Source: Gekko japonicus (Eukaryota). Taken from it: a DNA stretch of 64,000 bases. The stretch covers positions 199,415 to 263,414 of the forward strand of contig NW_015160837.1 of assembly GCF_001447785.1 (NCBI RefSeq), written 5' to 3'. The position numbers and the translations under genes were made by a program. Positions 9,701 to 63,198 of this stretch are shown here, piece after piece. Numbering within the stretch: position 1 is the stretch's first letter; each line of letters opens with the position of its first letter. The notes under the pieces are model-generated. The model had not been told where the DNA came from. It was given only the letters and a program-made list of their open reading frames with translations, and made no database searches.

Positions 9701-12369
9701 CTTACAAAAGAGCTGCTCTTGGTCTTAAGGTACATAGCTACTGTGTATGTGTTGATGCCACCTATGCTCAATCTCTGGAGAATCAGTGTGCATTGCTAGG
9801 CCAATTGTTTGTGTATGAAAAGTTGTATAGTCACATTAGTCCATGCAAAATCCAAAAACAAAAATGAAATCCATATAATACATATTTTTAGGACAAAACA
9901 AATTGTTCATGTCTCCATTATAGTCATGAGTGCATTCTGTGTAGCTGGCTCAATGAGTACACTGAATTTTTTGTGTAGGGCAATGGCTGGTTTTGATCAT
10001 AGAAAGTGCTGGCTTCCAAAGACTTGACTTCTTGTGATATAGTTACTATTAACTTTTCAATTAACTTTTTAAAAGGTCAGTAATGTTGATGATCTGAGCA
10101 TTTATTGCTCGTTGTTGTTGTTGCTCAGTCGCATAGTCGAGTCCGACTCTTTTTGAGCAACATTGGTGAAAGAGCTTGAACATTTATAGGAGTTGTGCTT
10201 CTGGATGCCTTCTGTTTCAGGTTTTGATCTGGATTTTGAATATGCTGGCAGGATGTGTGTGCGGTTTTGGTTGATTTCCCCCTCCCACTGTAGACACACA
10301 CACCCCGCATTGCACCTAGCGCTGTTCTTGAGATTCTCATGACCCTTGGGGGCAGTGCTTTGTGGTTCTCAGATTGCTATAGTGTTGGGTGCGGGGGCAC
10401 AACTGGAGAATTCTGCTCCATGAGTGGAGCTTGCCAATAATGGGAACCAGCTCGTTGTCTCTGTGTATATATATGAGTCTGGACTTGGATGCATAAGAGA
10501 GAGTGTTTCTGGGCATAGATAGATCTGCTTACTCCTCACCAAAATTTCTCTAGCCAGGTCTTGTTCATTGTTCTTCAGGGAAAGGGTGAGTGATTTTCAA
10601 GAAGGTTTGACAATGACATGTTTTTTGCTCCTTTTTTTTGGCTTACCATTTCCACATTTTTAGTAGATTTCTTTCAAAGACCGAAGGTAAAATTTATGTG
10701 ATCACTAATGAAAGGAATAAAATTCTGCTGCTTTGTCTATAGAACAGGGAAAATGCATTAAAACACCTGTTTTAGATAGTGTCTACAGCAGACTTAAGAG
10801 TTTTTGGTGATTTCTTCCCCATGACCACCTTCGAGGTCAAGGTCGTATTCCTCAGGGCTTGTTACTGTGATAGAGCTGGGTCATAAGAAGCTATTTAGGC
10901 TAGTTCTCACTGGGGTTCTAAACTTGCACCTGGATTGCTCCATTTCTGACTACAGGTGGGTACATTGTTTAAAGTTCTACCATATTTTAAAGACATCCTC
11001 TGCACATAACAAACAAGCATATCTGCGTAAAGGCTATACTAGACCTGTTATTGTCAGCACAAATTTTCTTTCTTCAGAAGATCTGTTGTAGGGAGGAGCA
11101 TTTATTGTAAGGAGTAAACTGCTACTTATGGTCTGAGGTGGTATAACCCAGATTCAGGATTAGCACCTCCTTGATAATTAGGGCTTGGTGTAGTTGACAT
11201 TTATATGAAACTGAGGTGAGAATAAGGTAATGGAGTGCATGGCACCATGGTTTATGTCACCTGGAGAAAGGCTCTTTGCTTACTATGCTGGTTTTCTATT
11301 TTCCTGAAAGTTTTAACATAGCAGCATTTTGAGATATGATACTCCACTTGCAATCTGGAGTGGTACAGCTCATTGTCCTCATTCTCTTATGTGTAAACCA
11401 GACCTAAAGACTGACAGGGAGCTTGGAAAGGTTTCCTGAGTGGAAACAGATGGGAGTAGAAGGACAGTGTTCTTTTAACATCAACTACTGGTCCCATATT
11501 CTTGGTTGCAGTTTGTGCCTTAAGAATAATGCTATTGTTTATTGTCTTCCTGTTTCAGAATTCCCATATATATGTATGAAATCTCCAGATTACATATCCA
11601 GTCTTTCATATGATTGAGTTTGATAGACATTTTAAAAACTCACATGTAGTCAGAGATCTTCATATCTAATGACCAAGCATGCCCTCGATGTGAATCTGAA
11701 TTTTAATTTATTTATTGACGTTATTTATAGTCCTGTCTCATTGAGGCTCAGGATAATTACACCGGGGGTGTCAAAAATATGACCTGTGGGCTGGATCCAG
11801 CCCCTGCGAGGCCCCAATCTGGCCCAAGAGCAATGGGCTTTGTGCAGCTTCCTGCTTCCTGTTAATTACATTGCAGCTCCTTTTGGCCAGTCTCTCCTAG
11901 TTACTGCTTCAGAGGAGAGAAAGAAAGCCTTCCATTGATTGGTTGAGAGCTCCTCCCCCCCTCCCCTAGGGAGGGAGGGGGAAGGAAAAAAGCCAGAGGA
12001 GGGGTGGCATCTTGTGGGTCTTTTAAGAAGACCAGCAATGTTTTATTCCAGGTATAAGCACACTTTTTCTTCAGAGAGAGGGAGGGAGGGAGCCAGAGGA
12101 AGCATGCCAGAAAATGAGAGAGAGAGTCCTGTAAGACCAAAAAACGTTTTCTTCCAGGGATTGCGGGGGAAGAGTCCTCTGTTTAAGACCAAAAAACGTT
12201 CTGTTCCAGGTATGAGGGGAGGGGGGAGGGTCCTGTGTTTAAGACCAAAAAATGTTTTATTCCAGGTATAACAGAGTGCCCATCCCATGACCTTTGGAGA
12301 GATCCCCCTTTCCATTTCTAATAGATTTGGGGGAGGGGGGGAAACCTAACAGCACAACTTGCATTCCTT

Positions 12370-54770: not shown

Positions 54771-56096
54771 TAACATCAAACGTGGTGTTTCCCTTGGGTT
54801 TGTAGAGGAAATTTTTTACCTATCTATGCATGGCCCCGTTGTATGGATTCTTTGATCTATACTTCAGGGGCATGGTTCAGAACTAGGTAGAAGGATACAT
54901 AAGATGTCTATATGACTTGAACACATGAAGCTGCCTTATACTAACTCAAACCATTGGTCCATCGAGGTCAGTATTGTCTGATAGGCAGTGACTCTCCAAG
55001 GTCGCAAGCCGAAGTCTTTTTAAATATTATTATTACCTGCTTCTTTTAGCTGGAGGTACCGGGGATTGAGCTTGGGATCTTCTGTATGCCGAGCAGATGC
55101 TCTGCCACTGAGCCATAGCCCACTCCATTGCAATATGGATTGTTCTGTGACTTACAGTAACCGCTCCAAAGTGTTTGCTGTTATAGACGCTGTGCAGCTG
55201 AGCACCTAATTTGTTGGAGTATTATTCTCAGTCCCAAGCCTTATTTTGAACTGAAACCTGTGTGGTCTCCCCTATCGCCTCTGCATTTATTCTGACTTCA
55301 GTGTTATGTGGACCTGGCTGCTTAAAGTGCAGGAAAAGCATATTCTCAAATTCATATGTGACTGCTTTAGTGCAGTAATCCCACCAGTGTAATACCTTGT
55401 ATTAAGCAATACCTTAAATTTTTTAATGCTGTAATTATGGCTAATGAGGTAAAGGTGAAGGTTGATTGCCAATTGAGAACTTTTCTCAAGCAAAAAAGTT
55501 CTCTCTACTGATTGTAGAATCTCAGAATAGATTAATAGCATATGCAAGTGTATAGGGATTCTATATTGTAGTGTTGCCATACCTGTGGCCTGGTGAGTTT
55601 GTGAAATGAAAGACTGCCTCTACAGTCTGGCTCAGAGGTAGGTATCTCCAAGCCTGTTGAACTCGGTGAGCTGAAACGCATCTGATTCTCTGCTAGATTG
55701 TGCTGTAAATAAAGTATGATGTAGTGATTAGACTAGGGCAGGCCTGTGGAGTCCTGGGTTCAGATCCTCACTTGCCATGTATGCACTACCTGTGCAATGT
55801 TGGGCCGTTTGTTTTCTCTCAGCCTAATGGTACTTCATGAGATGGTTATGAGGATAAAATGAAAAAGTAGAGAACAACATATGCCTTCCTTAATTTTTGT
55901 TAAATAAAAAATGTAATCAATATATAAAATTGCTATTTTGTAAGCTCGAAGTACAGTCTTTTGGGAGTGGCAGATCTAGGCTTTTCAACCTGTTAGCTTA
56001 TTAAATTAACCAGGTAGACTGAAATAGGAAGAAAATCTTACAAGGCTGCCTAATAAAAGCAGATATTATACCGACTGGTGTTAATTCCTCCAACAG

Positions 56097-56202
56097 AGAG
56101 CAGGGCTCAGACATATCAGAAACTGGCGTCAGTGAAAATGACGAGAATCCGGTCAGAATTATTTCTGTAACGCCTGCAAAAACAGAACCTGTTAAAAACA
56201 AG
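56097..56202 (+). CDS. PDS5A: PDS5A exon 31
   Basis: cag|A..AAG|gtatgg, 106 nt; [35 protein letters not shown]. Confidence 0.95.
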
Positions 56203-56460
56203 GTATGGTTGAGGTACTTAAAAGATGTCTCAGAATTGCTACCTGATGTTTTATGCAACTACTATATTTGCTTCGCCATCCCATGAAAACAGAGTGCAGA
56301 TTAATAACACTGGTTCTGCTGAGGAATAGAAAGAAGGTCGCTGACTGAAACAGGGTTTATCTTAGTTACTGAATATCTGGTGAGGGAGGAAAAGCCCTCA
56401 AATGTTTACTAGACAGGGGTGGGTAACAGAGGTAAGATTTAGTCCTCTGCGTGGCAGCAC

Positions 56461-57783: not shown

Positions 57784-57841
57784 CGATGACCTTCTAGGAT
57801 TCAGTTGGCCAGAGACTTAATAATTCGTTTTCTTTTTCTAG

Positions 57842-58197
57842 GAGATGAATTCTGATCAAGCAACACAAGGGAATGTGAGCACAGAGCGAGGGAAGAAAAG
57901 AACCACAGCAGCAGCTGGGGCAGAGAATATTCATCAAAAGACGGAAGAAAAGAAAACGGACGAGATGGGACAGTCAGTCCCTCCCAAACCCCGGAGAGGG
58001 CGTCCCCCCAAGTCTGAATCTCAGGGCACCACGGCAAAAAATGCTGAAGCTAGTAAACCATCTGGCAGGGGACGGAAAAGGGCAGCGCCAAGTCAAGAAG
58101 GTCCAGGGGGGTTAGAGGCAAGTAACGCCAAAGCACCAAAACAGCAGGACACAGCGAAAAAAGCAGTACCAGCACAAAGACAGATTGATCTGCAAAG
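57842..58197 (+). CDS. PDS5A: PDS5A exon 32
   Basis: tag|GAG..AG|gtaagg, 356 nt; [45 protein letters not shown]. Confidence 0.97.
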
Positions 58198-58705
58198 GTA
58201 AGGAAACAACACACAGCTCTTGAGGACTGTTCCTAAATGTCGAAATAGATTTGTCATAAATGCAGAGTGAAACGCTGGTAAACCAGAGCCATTTACCATT
58301 AATCTTTAGTGTTAACTAAGACGTGGGCAGTATGGGTTGCACTTGGCGGTACCCCCTATAGCAATCTTGGGTTTTGTTGGGTGATAATTTGGAAAGGGTA
58401 CCGATGGTTTTATCGACAGCTCCAGAATTAGCCTAGGTGTTTAAACCATGGTTTTGAAAGAACTTCATGGCCTGACCCTACTACTGGCTCTTGTCCCCTT
58501 GCTTCTGTTGACCTTCACGCTCTCCTGCTCCTCCCCACCCCACTTTACATTTGTAGTCTTTGTAATACGATTCCAACTTCTTATCCAGCTAATATATTTA
58601 TAATCCTAGCAAATAAGAAACAGCAACTTTATTGAAGGTACCGGGATGGAGACCTTTTTTTCTGTTTGCAGCCCCCCCCCCCCCAAGCTACATTCATGTT
58701 GTATC

Positions 58706-58911
58706 CAGTGTTCCCTCTAAGCTGAGTTAGCGTGAGCTAGCTCACAGTTTTTTAGCCTCTGGCTCACACATTTTCGTCTTAGCTCAGAAAGGATGGCTCC
58801 GGAGCAAACTAATTTATGCAATAGCCAAATCGCTCGCTCACAACTTTAATGCCAGTAACTCACAAAATAGAATTTTGGCTCACAAGACTCCACAGCTTAG
58901 AGGGAACATTG
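58706..58911 (-). mobile_element. hAT-type MITE family A, copy 7
   Basis: TIRs present; TSD GTTGTATC. Confidence 0.92.
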
Positions 58912-60839
58912 GTTGTATCTGTAGGTCCCTGTCCCTCAGGAGTGACTTTGTGAAGGCTCTGGGGGCTGCAGTGGGGGAAAGGGAACATGGCAACAATCCC
59001 TCTCACAAACTCCTCCCGCTTGAAAATTCTTTGGGTCTGTTTCTAGCACAGATACTGGATTATTATTTTTTTATGGGAAAGATGCAACCTTTAACTTGAT
59101 GAGGATGAATATTGAAGTGTACGGAGTATAAAGGGCAGTTTGCCGAAAACTCTCTCCTGTGGTGTCCCGAACAACCATTTCCAAATTCTCGTTCTGTTCT
59201 TGTTCGCAGAGGATTACTGTGGGAAGGGGGGGGGGGTAGAGAAAGAGGCACGAGCGCTTTCTGTTGGCATGACGATGGGAATCCAACTTACTCTGCTGAG
59301 TTGAACAAGCAGGAAGAGGCCTTCCAAGTAAACACGGGGCTTCTTTCCTGGCCAGTGAAGGTGATAGGCTGTTCCTTTTGCGATTTGCTCCTGATGGAAT
59401 CAAAACGGGAGAGAGAACAGCCGTGTGAACCGTTCCTTCCCCTTCAGGTTAGGCTGCTGGAGGCTCCTTCTTATCTCAAGGGTTCTTCTTATCCCTCAGG
59501 TTCTCCCCGGTCCTTCTGTCACAGAGGTTTCCGTTTCTTTCTCCCATTCTACTTGAGACATTAGTCCAGAGCTCTGTGACCCCAGCTTCCTTGACATAGT
59601 TAGGAGCTTTGGCAGATTCATCCCCAATATTCACCTCAGCAGTTACCTGCCATTTGCCTCCGCCTAGGCCCTGTGCACAGGAAACGGCTGATCTGCTGCA
59701 TAAAAGGAGGGCTGCCAAGGACCCCGTTTCTGTTCACACGCGGGATTCCCGTGTGAGCCGGTGTCCCTTGTGCCTTGGTTTCCATATTAGCAAAGAAGAC
59801 ACAAGCAAAACCAGTGGTTCACAGATCCCCTCGCCAGGGGCGACTGCCTCTCCTCCCGTCTTGCACAATGGCTGCCTCCCTCTGGGTTCTTTGCAATGTG
59901 AAATGGATTGTGGGGGGAGGGATTTTTGGGGGGGGGCTGAAAAACCAGTTCTGCCCCCCTCCAGTGCAAAGAATCCAGGGTGTCTTGATACGGGCGTGGG
60001 AGGAGGAGGAGAGCTCTCCTTCTTTCCTGGCAGCAGTTCCTCTGTGCTCAGAGGAGTTCATGGCGTGATGGGATTTGTGTGGACTTCTCTTCCACAAGTA
60101 GGGCCCAGCATGTAGGCCTGTGCCAAAGTTGCCAGTCCTCTAGCCCCTTGTCAGTTCAAAGTGTGCCCTCTATTAGAAATCGGTTGCTGATCGTGGAGTT
60201 AGAAGGAAGGATATTGATCTGATTCTGGCTCCTGATCCATCTTGCGCTAGTAAGCAGCAGAATGGGAGAAGCTTACCCAGAAGTCACCCTGCTGCGAAAC
60301 CACGGACCCTGTCAAGTATCCACAAATTCAGTGCTGTGCAGTTTCCAGAGGACTCAGTGGAACGGCCAGGTTACTGTTAACCACAAATAACAACTAGTTA
60401 CCGAGACCAGCCAAAAAAGTGTGGGGCTGGCCTCCCTGTGCTTTGCACAAGCTGCTTTTGAAGTGGGTAATGGTGTTCAAATGAAGTTTGAAATCCAGCT
60501 GGGCTTGTGCAAGCCCTTGGTCAAAGCCGCACAATTTGTGGCACCTCCAGCCAGGTATTATGGCCTGTTAGGGGCTTGACAAACATTGCAGGTGGGGGGG
60601 TCTTTCTCTTTTCTGCTGTCAGGCATAAAGAGGAGTTTATTAAGCTTCTGGACAAAGGATACCATGAATGGCTGTTGGGTTGTATTTAACTTCTGGGCCA
60701 CAAGTTGGGCTGCTTTGCCCTTTGGCGTGTGTCAAGTAGCTTTACAGATTCCAGCCCAAGATTGAGGAGCTATGTCTTAAGTCTGGTTTCTAGCAATATC
60801 TGGTATTTTAACTCTTCCTACACGGAAGCTTTTAAACAG

Positions 60840-60902
60840 NNNNNNNNNNNNNNNNNNNNNNNNNNNNNNNNNNNNNNNNNNNNNNNNNNNNNNNNNNNNN
60901 NN
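60840..60902. other. Assembly gap (63 N)
   Basis: Run of n characters. Confidence 1.
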
Positions 60903-61157
60903 GTAGATTTTTTTTTTTTAAACCCTGTAAAATACTTTTGTTCAGCTCCGTAGTATACATTTGATATCCGTAGACCATTTGTCCTCCCTTTCGAAGAAGG
61001 TTTAAGAAAAAAAACATTAAAGACAGCTCAAGTCGACTCTGGCTTTGAACGGTGGAGGAATCAACTTGTCTCCACTGCAAGGACAGTAGCACAGTTCCTA
61101 GCTTGATGTAGTTAGAATTTGACTCCCAGATGATATTCCCGTTTTAACGTTTTTCAG

Positions 61158-61308
61158 AAGCCAGGTGCTGGGAAGTGACGGAGACTCAGTGTTGGAGATA
61201 GAATCAAGTCCCGGATATTCTCCCAGTGAAATGGATCTTTTTAAGCTTTGTGAGAGCAGCCAGGAAGACACTGAGGATACAGATCTAACAGAGGGAGGCT
61301 TCCTGAAG
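61158..61308 (+). CDS. PDS5A: Candidate alternative penultimate PDS5A exon (32b), acidic Ser-rich tail
   Basis: tttttcag|A..AAG|gtgcag, 151 nt, phase 2 in and phase 0 out, no stop; SQVLGSDGDSVLEIESSPGYSPSEMDLFKLCESSQEDTEDTDLTEGGFLK; resembles the PDS5B penultimate exon; donor is weak. Confidence 0.7.
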
Positions 61309-62028
61309 GTGCAGACAGGCAGCTTACACAGGGCTCCGCAACGGGATTTGTATGGTTGGGGGTGCTGGAAGGAGGTGGCGGCAGTCAAGCCTTTTATGAG
61401 ACGGGTTGATGTGTGTGGATGGTGGGCATCACGCCCCACTTCTGTATTTTTGTAAATTCGGTTGATCTAGAGTGTTGGGTTTGCTAATGCAGGTATACAC
61501 AATACTGGCCCGTATCCAGCGGCGTTCAAGAAATTTGGCCCTTAAGTTGTCTTCAGACAAGGGTGGCTGTTTCCTCCGATTCCCATGCCCCCCTAGACTC
61601 CTCTGCTGTCCTTGAGGTTCTGCTGCTCTCCTCTTAAGGAAAGCTTTAAGGGCACTTAAATTTTCCTAACTGTGTGTGGTTGGATACAGGCCGGCATGGT
61701 TCTCTCCATTCGACTACCAATCCACTGCAGAGCAATTTCTAGACTCGAGCGAAAGCATCTTTGTGATCACACTTGCTTTAAATTAAAAGAATGCTCCCCC
61801 CCCCCTTCAATCAATTTGTGAAATTATTGCTGAGTTGACTGTGAAAACAAATTGCCTGTGTTCAGGGAGATTCGGATTCGGCCCCTAACTTCCAGCGGCA
61901 GTGACACCACTGGAAAACACAGTTCATTGTAAGAAATTAAACGTGGACTTGAACAGGGAAAATTTGTTTTCCTGGCTTGGGTGGACTCGAACACTTCCTA
62001 AAGCTTTCCTTTTTTTCTTCTTCACAAG

Positions 62029-62032
62029 GTAA
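62029..62032 (+). CDS. PDS5A: PDS5A exon 33 coding part in the short isoform (G + TAA, protein ends QIDLQR*)
   Basis: Long pyrimidine tract then acaag|GTAA; completes AG+G = Arg then stop, as I recall for human PDS5A. Confidence 0.88.
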
Positions 62033-62121
62033 AAAGAAAATGTGCCCACAAGGGAAGGAAAGGAGGGCCCAATCCAGGCATGCCCCCAGCTTCTGCAAAA
62101 ACCAAGAAACTTCCTATATAG
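62029..62121 (+). CDS. PDS5A: PDS5A exon 33 alternative frame in the candidate long isoform
   Basis: Phase-0 reading gives VKRKCAHKGRKGGPNPGMPPASAKTKKLPI* (TAG 62119-62121); used only if 61158-61308 is included. Confidence 0.65.
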   Translation, partial: VKRKCAHKGRKGGPNPGMPPASAKTKKLPI

Positions 62122-62726
62122 GAACTGAGAATATTTCAACACTTGGCTTTCAGCTCTGAAGACAGAAGGAAAAACTCTGCAGGAACTCTTGAGAGAGAGG
62201 CTAAAAGCATCTGTACTTATTTCCCCTGAGACTTTTTTTATGAAAAGTCAATAATTAAGCAAATTGCTTAACACTTGATTCCAGTTCCTGCATAATCTGG
62301 AGTTTAAAAGTGTTTTTACTCCATTAATTTTCATGCTGCATTTTTTTTAAAAGAAAGTCAGAGGGAGGTCCTTACGAGAACATAAAAAATGCTCAGACCC
62401 AGAACCAGCTTTGGCCCATCTTTTTATGAGACGTAGAAGCCAACTGAATGAGGTTTTAAACGAAGACCCGAGGAAGATGCCTGAATTCTTGTTTGCTTTA
62501 CTTTTGGAGACTCTTATGTATAATTCTTTCAACCTGCCTACTTTCCAGCAAAAATAAGGTGTACAGATTTTGGTTCCTGCTACGAAAAGTCACATAGTGA
62601 CAATTTTTATACATGTTGCTTTCTGACTTTTACCAGAGTGGGAGAGCAATCACTTGATGATTGATTTGCAAGTAGACATTTCAGATTTTTTTTTTTAAAT
62701 CCCCGTTTTAGTTTAATATAATTTGC

Positions 62727-62732
62727 AATAAA
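62727..62732 (+). terminator. Polyadenylation signal, proximal
   Basis: AATAAA followed by GU/U-rich TTGTTGTTTGTTTT. Confidence 0.7.
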
Positions 62733-63143
62733 TGTACATATTGTTGTTTGTTTTATAAAAACATATATCACTTCTAAGTGGGTTTACTCCTGTGGTTCTG
62801 TTGGAATATTCTAAAATTTTAATGGAGTAAAGACAGCCCGGTATTTGATTTTATAATGTTTTGTCACCAGATTTTTATTATTGATGTAAAAAATCAATTT
62901 TTAAAAATAGTTGGACTTCGGCAGCTTTGTAAGGAACGTTTGGAAATGTTTAGGATTGCTCTCAATTTTAAGCATTTGTGCTGATTGAAAATAAGTCTGT
63001 TTCACGTCTTTGTCTTCCTATCCCAGCTCATTTTTAACGTTTCATTTAAAAGACCGTTGCATCGATATTAATTTTCCTGGCATTGTTTGGCATACTGTGT
63101 ACACTTTTATGTACACATTATCATATTTAAGTTTGTTGCATAA

Positions 63144-63149
63144 AATAAA
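63144..63149 (+). terminator. Polyadenylation signal, distal
   Basis: AATAAA preceded by TGTA motifs at the end of the conserved UTR block. Confidence 0.7.
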
Positions 63150-63198
63150 TGCTTCTAGGTGTCACGTGGTTATCATTTCGCTTACATCTCTGTAGAAT

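What the first reader, a model, noticed from the sequence alone, without database searches (positions are those of the whole stretch)
61158..62121. Hidden cassette exon switches the terminal exon's frame and restores a PDS5B-like C-terminus
Seen: a 151-nt AG/GT-bounded segment (61158-61308) accepts exon 32's phase-2 end and encodes SQVLGSDGDSVLEIESSPGYSPSEMDLFKLCESSQEDTEDTDLTEGGFLK. It leaves in phase 0, so exon 33's G-TAA is read as GTA AAA, giving VKRKCAHKGRKGGPNPGMPPASAKTKKLPI*. The total extension is 80 aa: an acidic block with SP, SQ and CK2-type sites, then a basic NLS-like block. From memory human PDS5B ends ..SSEEVDVFQGSSPVDDIPQEETEEEEVSTVN|VRRRSAKRERR*, which lines up with SPSEMDLF..SQEDTEDTDL..|VKRKCAHKGRK, including Val at the last exon start. 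Inference: this is the ancestral penultimate PDS5 exon, retained as an alternative exon (weak donor AAG|GTGCAG) in this reptile, while the familiar QIDLQR* end is the skipped form. The start of exon 33 is then coding in one isoform and UTR in the other. Automated annotations of some sauropsids may already predict it.
Basis: partly seen in the sequence, partly recalled or inferred. Interest (0 to 1): 0.85.

Follow-up and report, generated by a model that had tools for sequence, protein, structure and literature searches.

The report
Conserved alternative exon in PDS5A
A 151-base exon in the last intron of this lizard's cohesin-regulator gene PDS5A is spliced into roughly a quarter of its mRNAs in one RNA-seq run, is conserved from shark to a bird-like sauropsid, and gives the protein a second, longer acidic-then-basic tail that the PDS5 papers I searched do not mention.

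Summary
Window 61158-61308 has AG/GT bounds, accepts exon 32's phase-2 end and leaves in phase 0. Exon 33 is then read as VKRK... instead of G+TAA.

Open frame and phase alone are not special: 190 nested candidates exist in this intron. Three other lines decide it.
- **RNA-seq of the same species.** Raw reads show both predicted junctions: 58197>61158 with 12 reads and 61308>62029 with 11 reads. The skip junction has 30 reads, so inclusion is about 28% in that run.
- **A bird-like sauropsid contig (L001).** It keeps the exon at exactly 151 nt with AG/GT. This is the best-conserved block of the region (86%). dN/dS is 0.26-0.29.
- **An NCBI model for whale shark PDS5A-like (XP_048456790.1).** It already contains exon 32 end, cassette and basic tail in the same order.

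Only the first 11 tail residues (VKRK..KGRK) are conserved. The lizard's other 19 follow a stop that is present in the bird-like contig (TGA) and absent here (GGA).

Homology to the PDS5B tail could not be tested: no tool gave a PDS5B C-terminus. This is a new, well-supported member of a known kind (a conserved alternative exon), already predicted by automated annotation in one species.

The parts
57842..58197 (+). 3' part of PDS5A exon 32 (last constitutive coding exon). It ends ..QIDLQ plus AG (phase 2), with donor AAAG|GTAAGG.
   Evidence: 58% identical to residues 512-628 of whale shark PDS5A-like P0007, E 9e-38. 80% nt identity to L001. RNA depth about 110-150 in X21.
61130..61157 (+). 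Acceptor region of the cassette: pyrimidine tract, TTTTAAC branch-point-like motif, TTTTTCAG|A.
   Evidence: TTTTTCAG is identical in L001. It is translated as ..FFR in genomic ORFs of the other groups.
61158..61308 (+). Alternative cassette exon, 151 nt. Its first base completes the Arg codon, followed by 50 codons for an acidic Ser-rich block (net charge about -11).
   Evidence: Junction reads 58197>61158 (12 in X21, 1 in X20) and 61308>62029 (11 in X21), with flanking intron depth 0 in X21. 151 nt with AG/GT in L001, 85-86% nt identity. dN/dS 0.285, differences by codon position 4/6/12. 59% identity without gaps to P0007, E 1e-16.
61309..61332 (+). Weak donor (AAG|GTGCAG) and conserved start of the downstream intron.
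   Evidence: The blastn block with L001 runs to 61332. The donor is GTGTAG in L001. Translated ..K|VQQA.. is shared by ORFs of several groups.
62029..62061 (+). Conserved basic tail (11 codons, VKRKCAHKGRK), read only when the cassette is included. The first 12 nt are dual-use.
   Evidence: L001 reads VKRKLARKGRK then TGA. Shark P0007 reads VRRKSMPKGRR.. directly after its cassette. The first 12 nt are identical in L001.
62030..62032 (+). TAA stop of the skipped (QIDLQR*) isoform.
   Evidence: Skip junction 58197>62029 seen in X21 (30 reads), X20 (6 reads) and an X1 contig.
62062..62121 (+). Lizard-side extension of the tail (19 codons plus TAG at 62119-62121). The first codon, GGA, sits where L001 has a TGA stop.

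Best explanation
Window 61158-61308 is a genuine, evolutionarily conserved alternative coding exon of PDS5A. Skipping joins exon 32 directly to exon 33, and the protein ends ..QIDLQR at a TAA that starts at the second base of exon 33. Inclusion adds 151 nt, which moves exon 33 into another frame. The protein then gains a 50-residue acidic, Ser-rich, mostly disordered block with one short conserved helix-prone motif (DLFKxC), followed by a short basic end (V-K/R-R-K-x3-K-G-R-K/R). Both stops lie in the last exon, so neither form should be a target of nonsense-mediated decay. The weak donor, which is weak in the bird-like contig too, and the reduced synonymous divergence fit a regulated alternative exon. 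Shown: the splicing, the conservation and the purifying selection. Inferred: the long tail acts as a charge or phospho-regulated module of the disordered PDS5 C-terminus, the part thought to set PDS5A and PDS5B apart. Also inferred: it is the counterpart of the PDS5B end.
For:: GT..AG joints at exactly 58197>61158 (X21: 12 reads, 11 starts; X20: 1 read) and 61308>62029 (X21: 11 reads, 10 starts), beside the skip joint 58197>62029 (X21: 30 reads; X20: 6 reads; X1 contig). X21 covers the cassette, and the intron on both sides of it has depth 0. JGI contig L001 has the same three exons in order, with the cassette exactly 151 nt and AG/GT kept; the cassette is the best-conserved block (85.9%, against 80-82% for exons 31, 32 and 33); cassette dN 0.113 is close to exon 32 dN 0.123. 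Omega is 0.285 (excess of synonymous changes, p=0.0075), or 0.26 with the tail (p=0.003). Cassette dS of 0.40 is below exon 32's 0.79; 50-residue matches in ORFs from 10 or more clusters, with no frame-breaking indel in the sauropsid-like ones; one has a 4-residue in-frame insertion. NCBI XP_048456790.1 (Rhincodon typus, PDS5A-like) has exon 32 end, cassette (59% identity, E 1e-16) and basic tail in the same order. AlphaFold2 gives mean pLDDT 61 with a single helix at residues 27-32; cassette charge about -11, tail +7 to +9.
Against: Junction evidence comes from one study. Only X21 shows both inclusion junctions with good counts; X20 gives a single read. The tissues are unknown. Reads resembling human DNA are dropped silently by the reads tool, so the 28% figure may be biased. 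The Logan contigs of X1 and X5 carry the cassette only on unspliced contigs. Selection statistics rest on one species pair and 22-29 differences. The neighbouring 3'UTR is itself 81% conserved, so nucleotide conservation of the tail alone does not prove coding. No peptide evidence. No functional data.
Confidence: 0.9

Rival explanations
1. Splicing noise: a chance pseudo-exon that the spliceosome uses now and then, without function.
For:: 190 nested AG..GT open segments of the right phase exist in the intron, so such segments are common. The donor lacks the consensus bases at +4 and +5. Only one run gives good counts.
Against: About 28% inclusion, with 10-11 distinct read starts at each junction. 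Exact length, splice sites and frame are kept in L001. The exon is as conserved as constitutive exon 32 at protein level, both in the shark (59% against 58%) and in L001 (dN 0.113 against 0.123).
Confidence: 0.03
2. The exon is conserved for an RNA-level role (for example, control of PDS5A mRNA fate or splicing feedback), and its peptide is incidental.
For: Synonymous divergence is unusually low (dS 0.40 against 0.79 in exon 32). The intron start after the donor and 1.25 kb of the 3'UTR are conserved too.
Against: Differences fall 4/6/12 on codon positions, and omega is 0.26-0.29 with p of 0.003-0.008. An in-frame 4-residue insertion is tolerated in P0004. The shark protein is 59% identical without gaps, at a distance where I would expect unconstrained DNA to be saturated (my own judgement). 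Both stops are in the last exon, so there is no obvious decay switch.
Confidence: 0.06
3. The cassette is used mainly as an alternative terminal exon: the intron after it is retained and the frame runs on for 46 more codons to about 61455.
For: The frame stays open past the donor (ORF 61165-61455). X1 and X5 contigs run unspliced through 60953-61570 and 61114-61884.
Against: In the RNA raw reads of X21, depth falls to 0 in 61356-61499, while 11 reads join 61308 to 62029. The read-through peptide is not conserved beyond about 10 codons. The unspliced contigs sit at the low depth of the rest of the intron.
Confidence: 0.01

Closest known systems
NCBI RefSeq model XP_048456790.1, sister chromatid cohesion protein PDS5 homolog A-like, Rhincodon typus (P0007)
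   Same: It ends with the same three pieces in the same order: exon 32 end (..QRQMDLQR), a 50-residue acidic block 59% identical to the lizard cassette without gaps, then V-R-R-K-..-K-G-R-R.
   Different: It is a 693-residue automated model that lacks much of the middle of PDS5A. Its tail is 14 residues against 30 in the lizard and 11 in the bird-like contig.
Canonical vertebrate PDS5A as treated in the literature (ends ..QIDLQR; review PMC8198109)
   Same: Same gene. The skipped isoform of this window ends exactly so, and it is the major form in the RNA-seq runs read.
   Different: The long isoform adds 50 + 11 conserved residues (plus 19 in the lizard). The review does not contain the word 'isoform' and describes the C-termini of PDS5A and PDS5B as under 28% identical.
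PDS5B C-terminus (long disordered tail with AT-hooks, phospho-regulated; PMC2672303, PMC11535040)
   Same: Paralogue with a longer disordered C-terminal part. Its last residues are SAKRERR, decoded from a cloning primer. They resemble LARKGRK, the last residues of the bird-like PDS5A long form. Phosphorylation of the PDS5B C-terminal part changes partner choice between sororin and Wapl.
   Different: I had no PDS5B tail sequence to test it. The kinase sites studied in PDS5B (1161-1209) lie elsewhere and are not conserved in PDS5A.
Conserved alternative exons in general (my own knowledge, not tested here)
   Same: Weak but conserved splice site, conserved flanking intron, lowered synonymous rate, and a disordered, phosphorylatable peptide.
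   Different: The length is not a multiple of three. The frame shift is absorbed because the skipped form stops at the second base of the next exon, so 12 identical bases serve as stop plus UTR in one form and as V-K-R-K in the other.

Membership tests
Alternative cassette exon (expressed) | Both inclusion junctions and the skipping junction are present in RNA of the same organism, at canonical GT..AG sites. | tested here: met
   58197>61158 (12 + 1 reads), 61308>62029 (11 reads), 58197>62029 (30 + 6 reads and one contig). All are GT..AG.
Alternative cassette exon (conserved, coding) | The orthologous exon keeps the same length class, splice sites and open frame in distant lineages. | tested here: met
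   L001: 151 nt with AG/GT. Sauropsid-like ORFs have no frame-breaking indels, and V (GTN) follows the last Lys. The shark model is collinear.
Alternative cassette exon (conserved, coding) | Purifying selection on the encoded peptide. | tested here: met
   Nei-Gojobori, window against L001: omega 0.285 (p=0.0075), or 0.26 with the tail (p=0.003). Codon positions 4/6/12. This is one species pair only.
PDS5A (sister chromatid cohesion protein PDS5 homolog A) | The host gene is PDS5A: the C-terminal disordered region with an RRGRPPK / GRGRKR AT-hook-like stretch, ending ..QIDLQR. | tested here: met
   Exon 32 against the NCBI-named PDS5A-like P0007 (Pfam PF20168): 58% identity, E 9e-38. The HEAT-repeat part of the window's gene was not examined.
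PDS5B-type C-terminus (homology to the last two coding exons of PDS5B) | Significant sequence alignment of cassette plus tail to the PDS5B C-terminus. | not testable with these tools
   The PDB holds only PDS5B 1-1111. Three homologue searches gave no PDS5B tail. Only SAKRERR, from a primer, is available.
PDS5B-type C-terminus (homology to the last two coding exons of PDS5B) | Same intron position and phase before the final basic peptide. | not tested
Classical nuclear localisation signal in the basic tail | Match to the monopartite K-K/R-x-K/R core or to a bipartite pattern. | tested here: inconclusive
   By eye, VKRKCAHKGRK is basic (net +7 to +9) but has no clean K-K/R-x-K/R core. PDS5A already has predicted NLSs upstream (PMC8198109).

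The most novel reading that the evidence does not exclude
The long PDS5A isoform is an ancient module, at least as old as jawed vertebrates: an acidic, phosphorylatable block with a DLFKxC helix, then a basic end. It is the true counterpart of the PDS5B C-terminus and has been overlooked because the field works with the short QIDLQR form. Regulated inclusion would then tune how PDS5A-cohesin behaves (chromatin or DNA contact, or partner choice). Its decay in part of a third, possibly mammalian, group would be one way in which PDS5A and PDS5B became distinct.
Probability: 0.35. Interest if true: 0.6.

Novelty: new member of a known kind. Interest (0 to 1): 0.45.

Why it matters
PDS5A and PDS5B are about 72% identical over their first 1200 residues. 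Their different roles in cohesin release, cohesion and loop control are commonly attributed to their divergent disordered C-termini (PMC8198109, PMC11535040). A second PDS5A C-terminus, conserved from shark to sauropsids and present in roughly a quarter of transcripts in one lizard RNA-seq run, means that 'the PDS5A tail' is not a single thing, at least in non-mammalian vertebrates. In practice it affects gene annotation in reptiles and birds and the design of tags, antibodies and knock-ins at the PDS5A C-terminus in chicken, lizard or fish models. It also gives a concrete test of what the extreme PDS5 C-terminus does. It is not a new kind of biology. Its weight for human or mouse work depends on whether mammals still use the exon, which I could not settle.

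Tried and rejected
1. Frame and phase as evidence. One search shows such segments are common in this intron, so this argument was dropped.
2. The search for homologous proteins, three searches. Shark tail region 630-693 and region 560-693 found only the query itself. The window ORF 61165-61452, region 1-48, found only short genomic ORFs. The length window of that tool hides full-length PDS5A and PDS5B isoforms, so these blanks say nothing about existing annotation in sauropsids.
DNA for the Logan and ENA ORFs could not be fetched. Only one foreign locus (L001) was obtained, by the search for related loci.
4. PDB search: PDS5B is present only to residue 1111, with no tail.
5. ESM Atlas search on the shark tail: no usable hit.
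6. Paper searches for a PDS5A C-terminal isoform and one supplement found nothing relevant. The PDS5A mis-splicing in SF3B1-mutant myelodysplasia (PMC6128865) concerns alternative 3' splice sites yielding truncated transcripts; no link to this exon appears in the passages read.
7. A bacterial promoter/terminator scan was irrelevant.
8. The search of earlier findings gave nothing bearing on this finding.
9. Joined model. Each exon was searched by reference, and the only joined sequence used is the natural database protein P0007.
10. A third group of ORFs (P0005, P0016, P0006, P0017-P0021, P0026) occurs on many ENA and Logan contigs and may be host DNA of mammals. I cannot exclude that some of it is human. 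I only aligned these proteins as the search returned them. I did not fetch their DNA or search further with them.

Full report
**What is in the sequence**

The + strand of the window carries the 3' end of PDS5A.
- Exon 32 ends at 58197 with ..QIDLQ plus the two bases AG (donor AAAG|GTAAGG).
- Exon 33 begins at 62029 behind CACAAG. In the usual form the codon AG+G (Arg) is followed at once by TAA.
- The segment 61158-61308 is 151 nt. It sits behind a pyrimidine tract and TTTTTCAG, and is followed by GTGCAG.
- Its first base completes AGA (Arg). Window 61159-61308 then gives 50 codons without a stop and leaves in phase 0.
- Exon 33 is then read as VKRKCAHKGRK... up to a TAG at 62119-62121.

**Is that more than chance?**

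Not on its own. A script that lists all AG..GT segments of at least 90 nt in this intron which accept phase 2, stay open and leave in phase 0 finds 190 nested candidates. The argument from frame and phase is therefore worthless, and the case rests on outside evidence.

**Expression**

Runs of the same species ('organism A') were found with the cassette as query. I laid two RNA-seq runs kept as raw reads (X20, X21) and two Logan contig sets (X1, X5) on window:57900-62200. Three GT..AG joints appear, at exactly the predicted coordinates once the tool's stated cut shifts are applied.

| Joint | Meaning | X21 | X20 | X1 |
|---|---|---|---|---|
| 58197>62029 | skipping | 30 reads, 23 starts | 6 reads | one contig, depth 324 |
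| 58197>61158 | exon 32 to cassette | 12 reads, 11 starts | 1 read | none |
| 61308>62029 | cassette to exon 33 | 11 reads, 10 starts | none | none |

- In X21 the cassette is covered, while the intron on both sides of it has depth 0.
- By junction counts, inclusion is about 11.5/(11.5+30), or 28%, in X21. It is lower in X20, where counts are too small to say more.
- X1 and X5 hold the cassette only on unspliced, low-depth contigs, like the rest of the intron.

Caveats on the figure:
- The informative reads come from one study, and the tissues are not known to me.
- The tool silently drops reads that resemble human DNA, which could distort the ratio.

**Conservation**

A phmmer search with the 50 residues against 1.84 billion representatives gave 7 hits.
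- Six are short ORFs called on genomic contigs (Logan, ENA, JGI). They read through the acceptor as ..FFR and through the donor as ..K-V...
- The seventh is NCBI XP_048456790.1, 'sister chromatid cohesion protein PDS5 homolog A-like' of the whale shark.
- That shark protein ends with ..QRQMDLQR, then a 50-residue block, then VRRKSMPKGRRQRL.
- Against it, the lizard's exon 32 is 58% identical (E 9e-38). The cassette is 59% identical without a gap (E 1e-16). The first 11 tail residues are 6/11 identical, in collinear order.
- A further search added closer squamate-like ORFs at 85-98% identity.
- In the alignment no sauropsid-like sequence has a frame-breaking indel. One has an in-frame insertion of 4 residues.

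One foreign locus could still be fetched by the search for related loci. This is L001, from JGI metagenome contig Ga0065711_1033423. It is evidently host DNA of a sauropsid. I take it for a bird, from its short AT-rich introns and the many near-identical variants of its ORF, but this is an inference.

blastn between the window and L001 gives four collinear blocks.

| Block | Window | Identity |
|---|---|---|
| exon 31 | 56094-56207 | 82% |
| exon 32 | 57828-58201 | 80% |
| cassette with 9 nt before and 24 nt after | 61149-61332 | 85.9% |
| exon 33 with 3'UTR | 62005-63169 | 80.7% over 1250 nt |

Details of L001:
- Its cassette (9994-10144) is exactly 151 nt, with TTTTTCAG|A and TTAAG|GTGTAG.
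- Exon 32 ends CAAAG|GTAAAA.
- Exon 33 starts AAAAAG|GTAAAAAGAAAA.
- Its frame-0 tail is VKRKLARKGRK followed by TGA.
- The lizard has GGA at that codon and runs on for 19 more residues. Only 50 + 11 residues are therefore conserved, and the rest of the '80-aa extension' is a lizard-side read-on.

Nei-Gojobori estimates, window against L001:

| Region | dN | dS | omega | p (excess of synonymous changes) |
|---|---|---|---|---|
| cassette | 0.113 | 0.397 | 0.285 | 0.0075 |
| cassette + tail | 0.119 | 0.457 | 0.26 | 0.003 |
| exon 32 | 0.123 | 0.788 | 0.156 | 3.5e-09 |

Differences in the cassette fall 4/6/12 on codon positions 1, 2 and 3. The peptide is as constrained as the constitutive neighbour, and synonymous sites are more constrained. 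That pattern, together with the conserved weak donor and the conserved intron start, is what regulated alternative exons usually show (my own knowledge).

**What it most likely does**

- The cassette is acidic (13 D/E, 2 K/R, net about -11). It is rich in Ser and Thr, with SP, SQ and S-x-x-D/E sites.
- The tail is basic, +7 to +9.
- AlphaFold2 with the small alignment gives low confidence (mean pLDDT 61) and a single short helix at residues 27-32. This falls in the conserved DLFKxC motif.
- The long isoform therefore lengthens the disordered PDS5A C-terminus by an acidic, probably phosphorylatable stretch with one short linear motif, plus a basic end.
- Both stop codons lie in the last exon, so both mRNAs should be stable.
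- The disordered C-terminal part of the paralogue PDS5B is a regulatory target: Nek2a and Cdk-cyclin A2 phosphorylation there switches it from sororin binding to Wapl binding (PMC11535040). It has also been reported to bind AT-rich DNA (PMC2672303).
- By analogy, I infer that the alternative PDS5A tail modulates contacts of PDS5A-cohesin with chromatin or partners. This is inference, and nothing here tests it.

**Comparison with what is known**

- The review of PDS5A and PDS5B (PMC8198109) does not contain the word 'isoform' and calls the two C-termini under 28% identical.
- An evolutionary survey (bioRxiv 10.1101/2025.05.08.652912) likewise does not contain 'isoform'.
- My full-text searches found no description of this exon.
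- Automated annotation has already predicted it in at least the whale shark.
- The tools could not show me full-length isoforms of other species, because of the length limits of the homologue search. I suspect that pipelines with RNA-seq support predict the long form in birds and reptiles too.

The claimed likeness to the PDS5B end could not be tested.
- The PDB has PDS5B only to residue 1111, and no search returned a PDS5B tail.
- The one checkable piece is a cloning primer in PMC2672303, which decodes to SAKRERR at the PDS5B end.
- That resembles LARKGRK at the end of the bird-like PDS5A long form, but seven basic residues prove little.

**A third group**

- ORFs P0005/P0016, P0006/P0017-P0021 and P0026 are 52-71% identical to the cassette. 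They share their own signature (..SLW-D/E-IESSPGNSS..).
- P0026 keeps ..FLK-V... P0005 and P0016 read ..FLE-M.., so there is no GT at the homologous donor. The P0006 group diverges before the exon end, as after a frameshift.
- They occur on many ENA metagenome and Logan contigs. They may be host DNA of mammals, and I cannot exclude human. I did not fetch their DNA or search with them.
- If they are mammalian, the exon is decaying in part of that clade.

**Working rules kept**

- I searched the spliced model exon by exon, by reference, and left the joined step out.
- The N block at 60840-60902 was left alone.

**Verdict**

The core interpretation is supported by direct junction reads and by conservation back to sharks: a real alternative exon that switches the frame of the last exon, with QIDLQR* as the skipped form. 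The PDS5B homology is plausible but untested. This is a well-supported new member of a known kind (a conserved alternative coding exon), already caught by one automated annotation and, as far as I could search, not described in papers. Interest is moderate.

Noticed in passing
window 58705-58912: A 208-bp element with 20-nt terminal inverted repeats, 95% complementary, so it looks like a MITE. It is extremely abundant in the RNA data: contig depth about 1e5 and thousands of reads with unrelated flanks. Several 'goes back' joints (58912>58705) suggest head-to-tail copies elsewhere.
   Followed up: partly
window 62029-63169 and L001 10742-11950: The start of the PDS5A 3'UTR is 80.7% identical over 1250 nt between the lizard and the bird-like contig. 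That is as conserved as the coding exons.
   Followed up: no
proteins P0005, P0016, P0006, P0017-P0021, P0026 (no locus fetched): A third, more divergent group of cassette-like genomic ORFs of unknown taxon, common on ENA metagenome contigs and perhaps mammalian host DNA. One member keeps K|V at the donor, one subgroup has E|M (no GT), and another diverges before the exon end. DNA was not fetched because a human origin could not be excluded.
   Followed up: partly
window 57900-58187 versus 62076-62200: In RNA run X21, depth over exon 32 is about 110-150 but only about 30 over the start of exon 33, and the junction reads sum to about 42. This may be the tool's silent removal of human-like reads, or a real 3'-end effect. 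Unexplained.
   Followed up: no
window 58909 joined to 62043: X1 and X5 each have one contig joining the end of the MITE to a point 15 nt inside exon 33 (ends TG..TG, not splice-like). It is probably an assembly chimera through a shared word, but it occurs in two studies.
   Followed up: no
window 61309-61455: The cassette's frame stays open for 46 codons past the donor (ORF 61165-61455). RNA reads of X21 do not cover it, so it seems unused.
   Followed up: yes
window 62062-62064 and L001 10775-10777: The stop of the long isoform in the bird-like contig (TGA) is GGA in the lizard, which lengthens the lizard tail from 11 to 30 residues. The shark tail has 14. Whether other squamates share the read-on is unknown.
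   Followed up: partly
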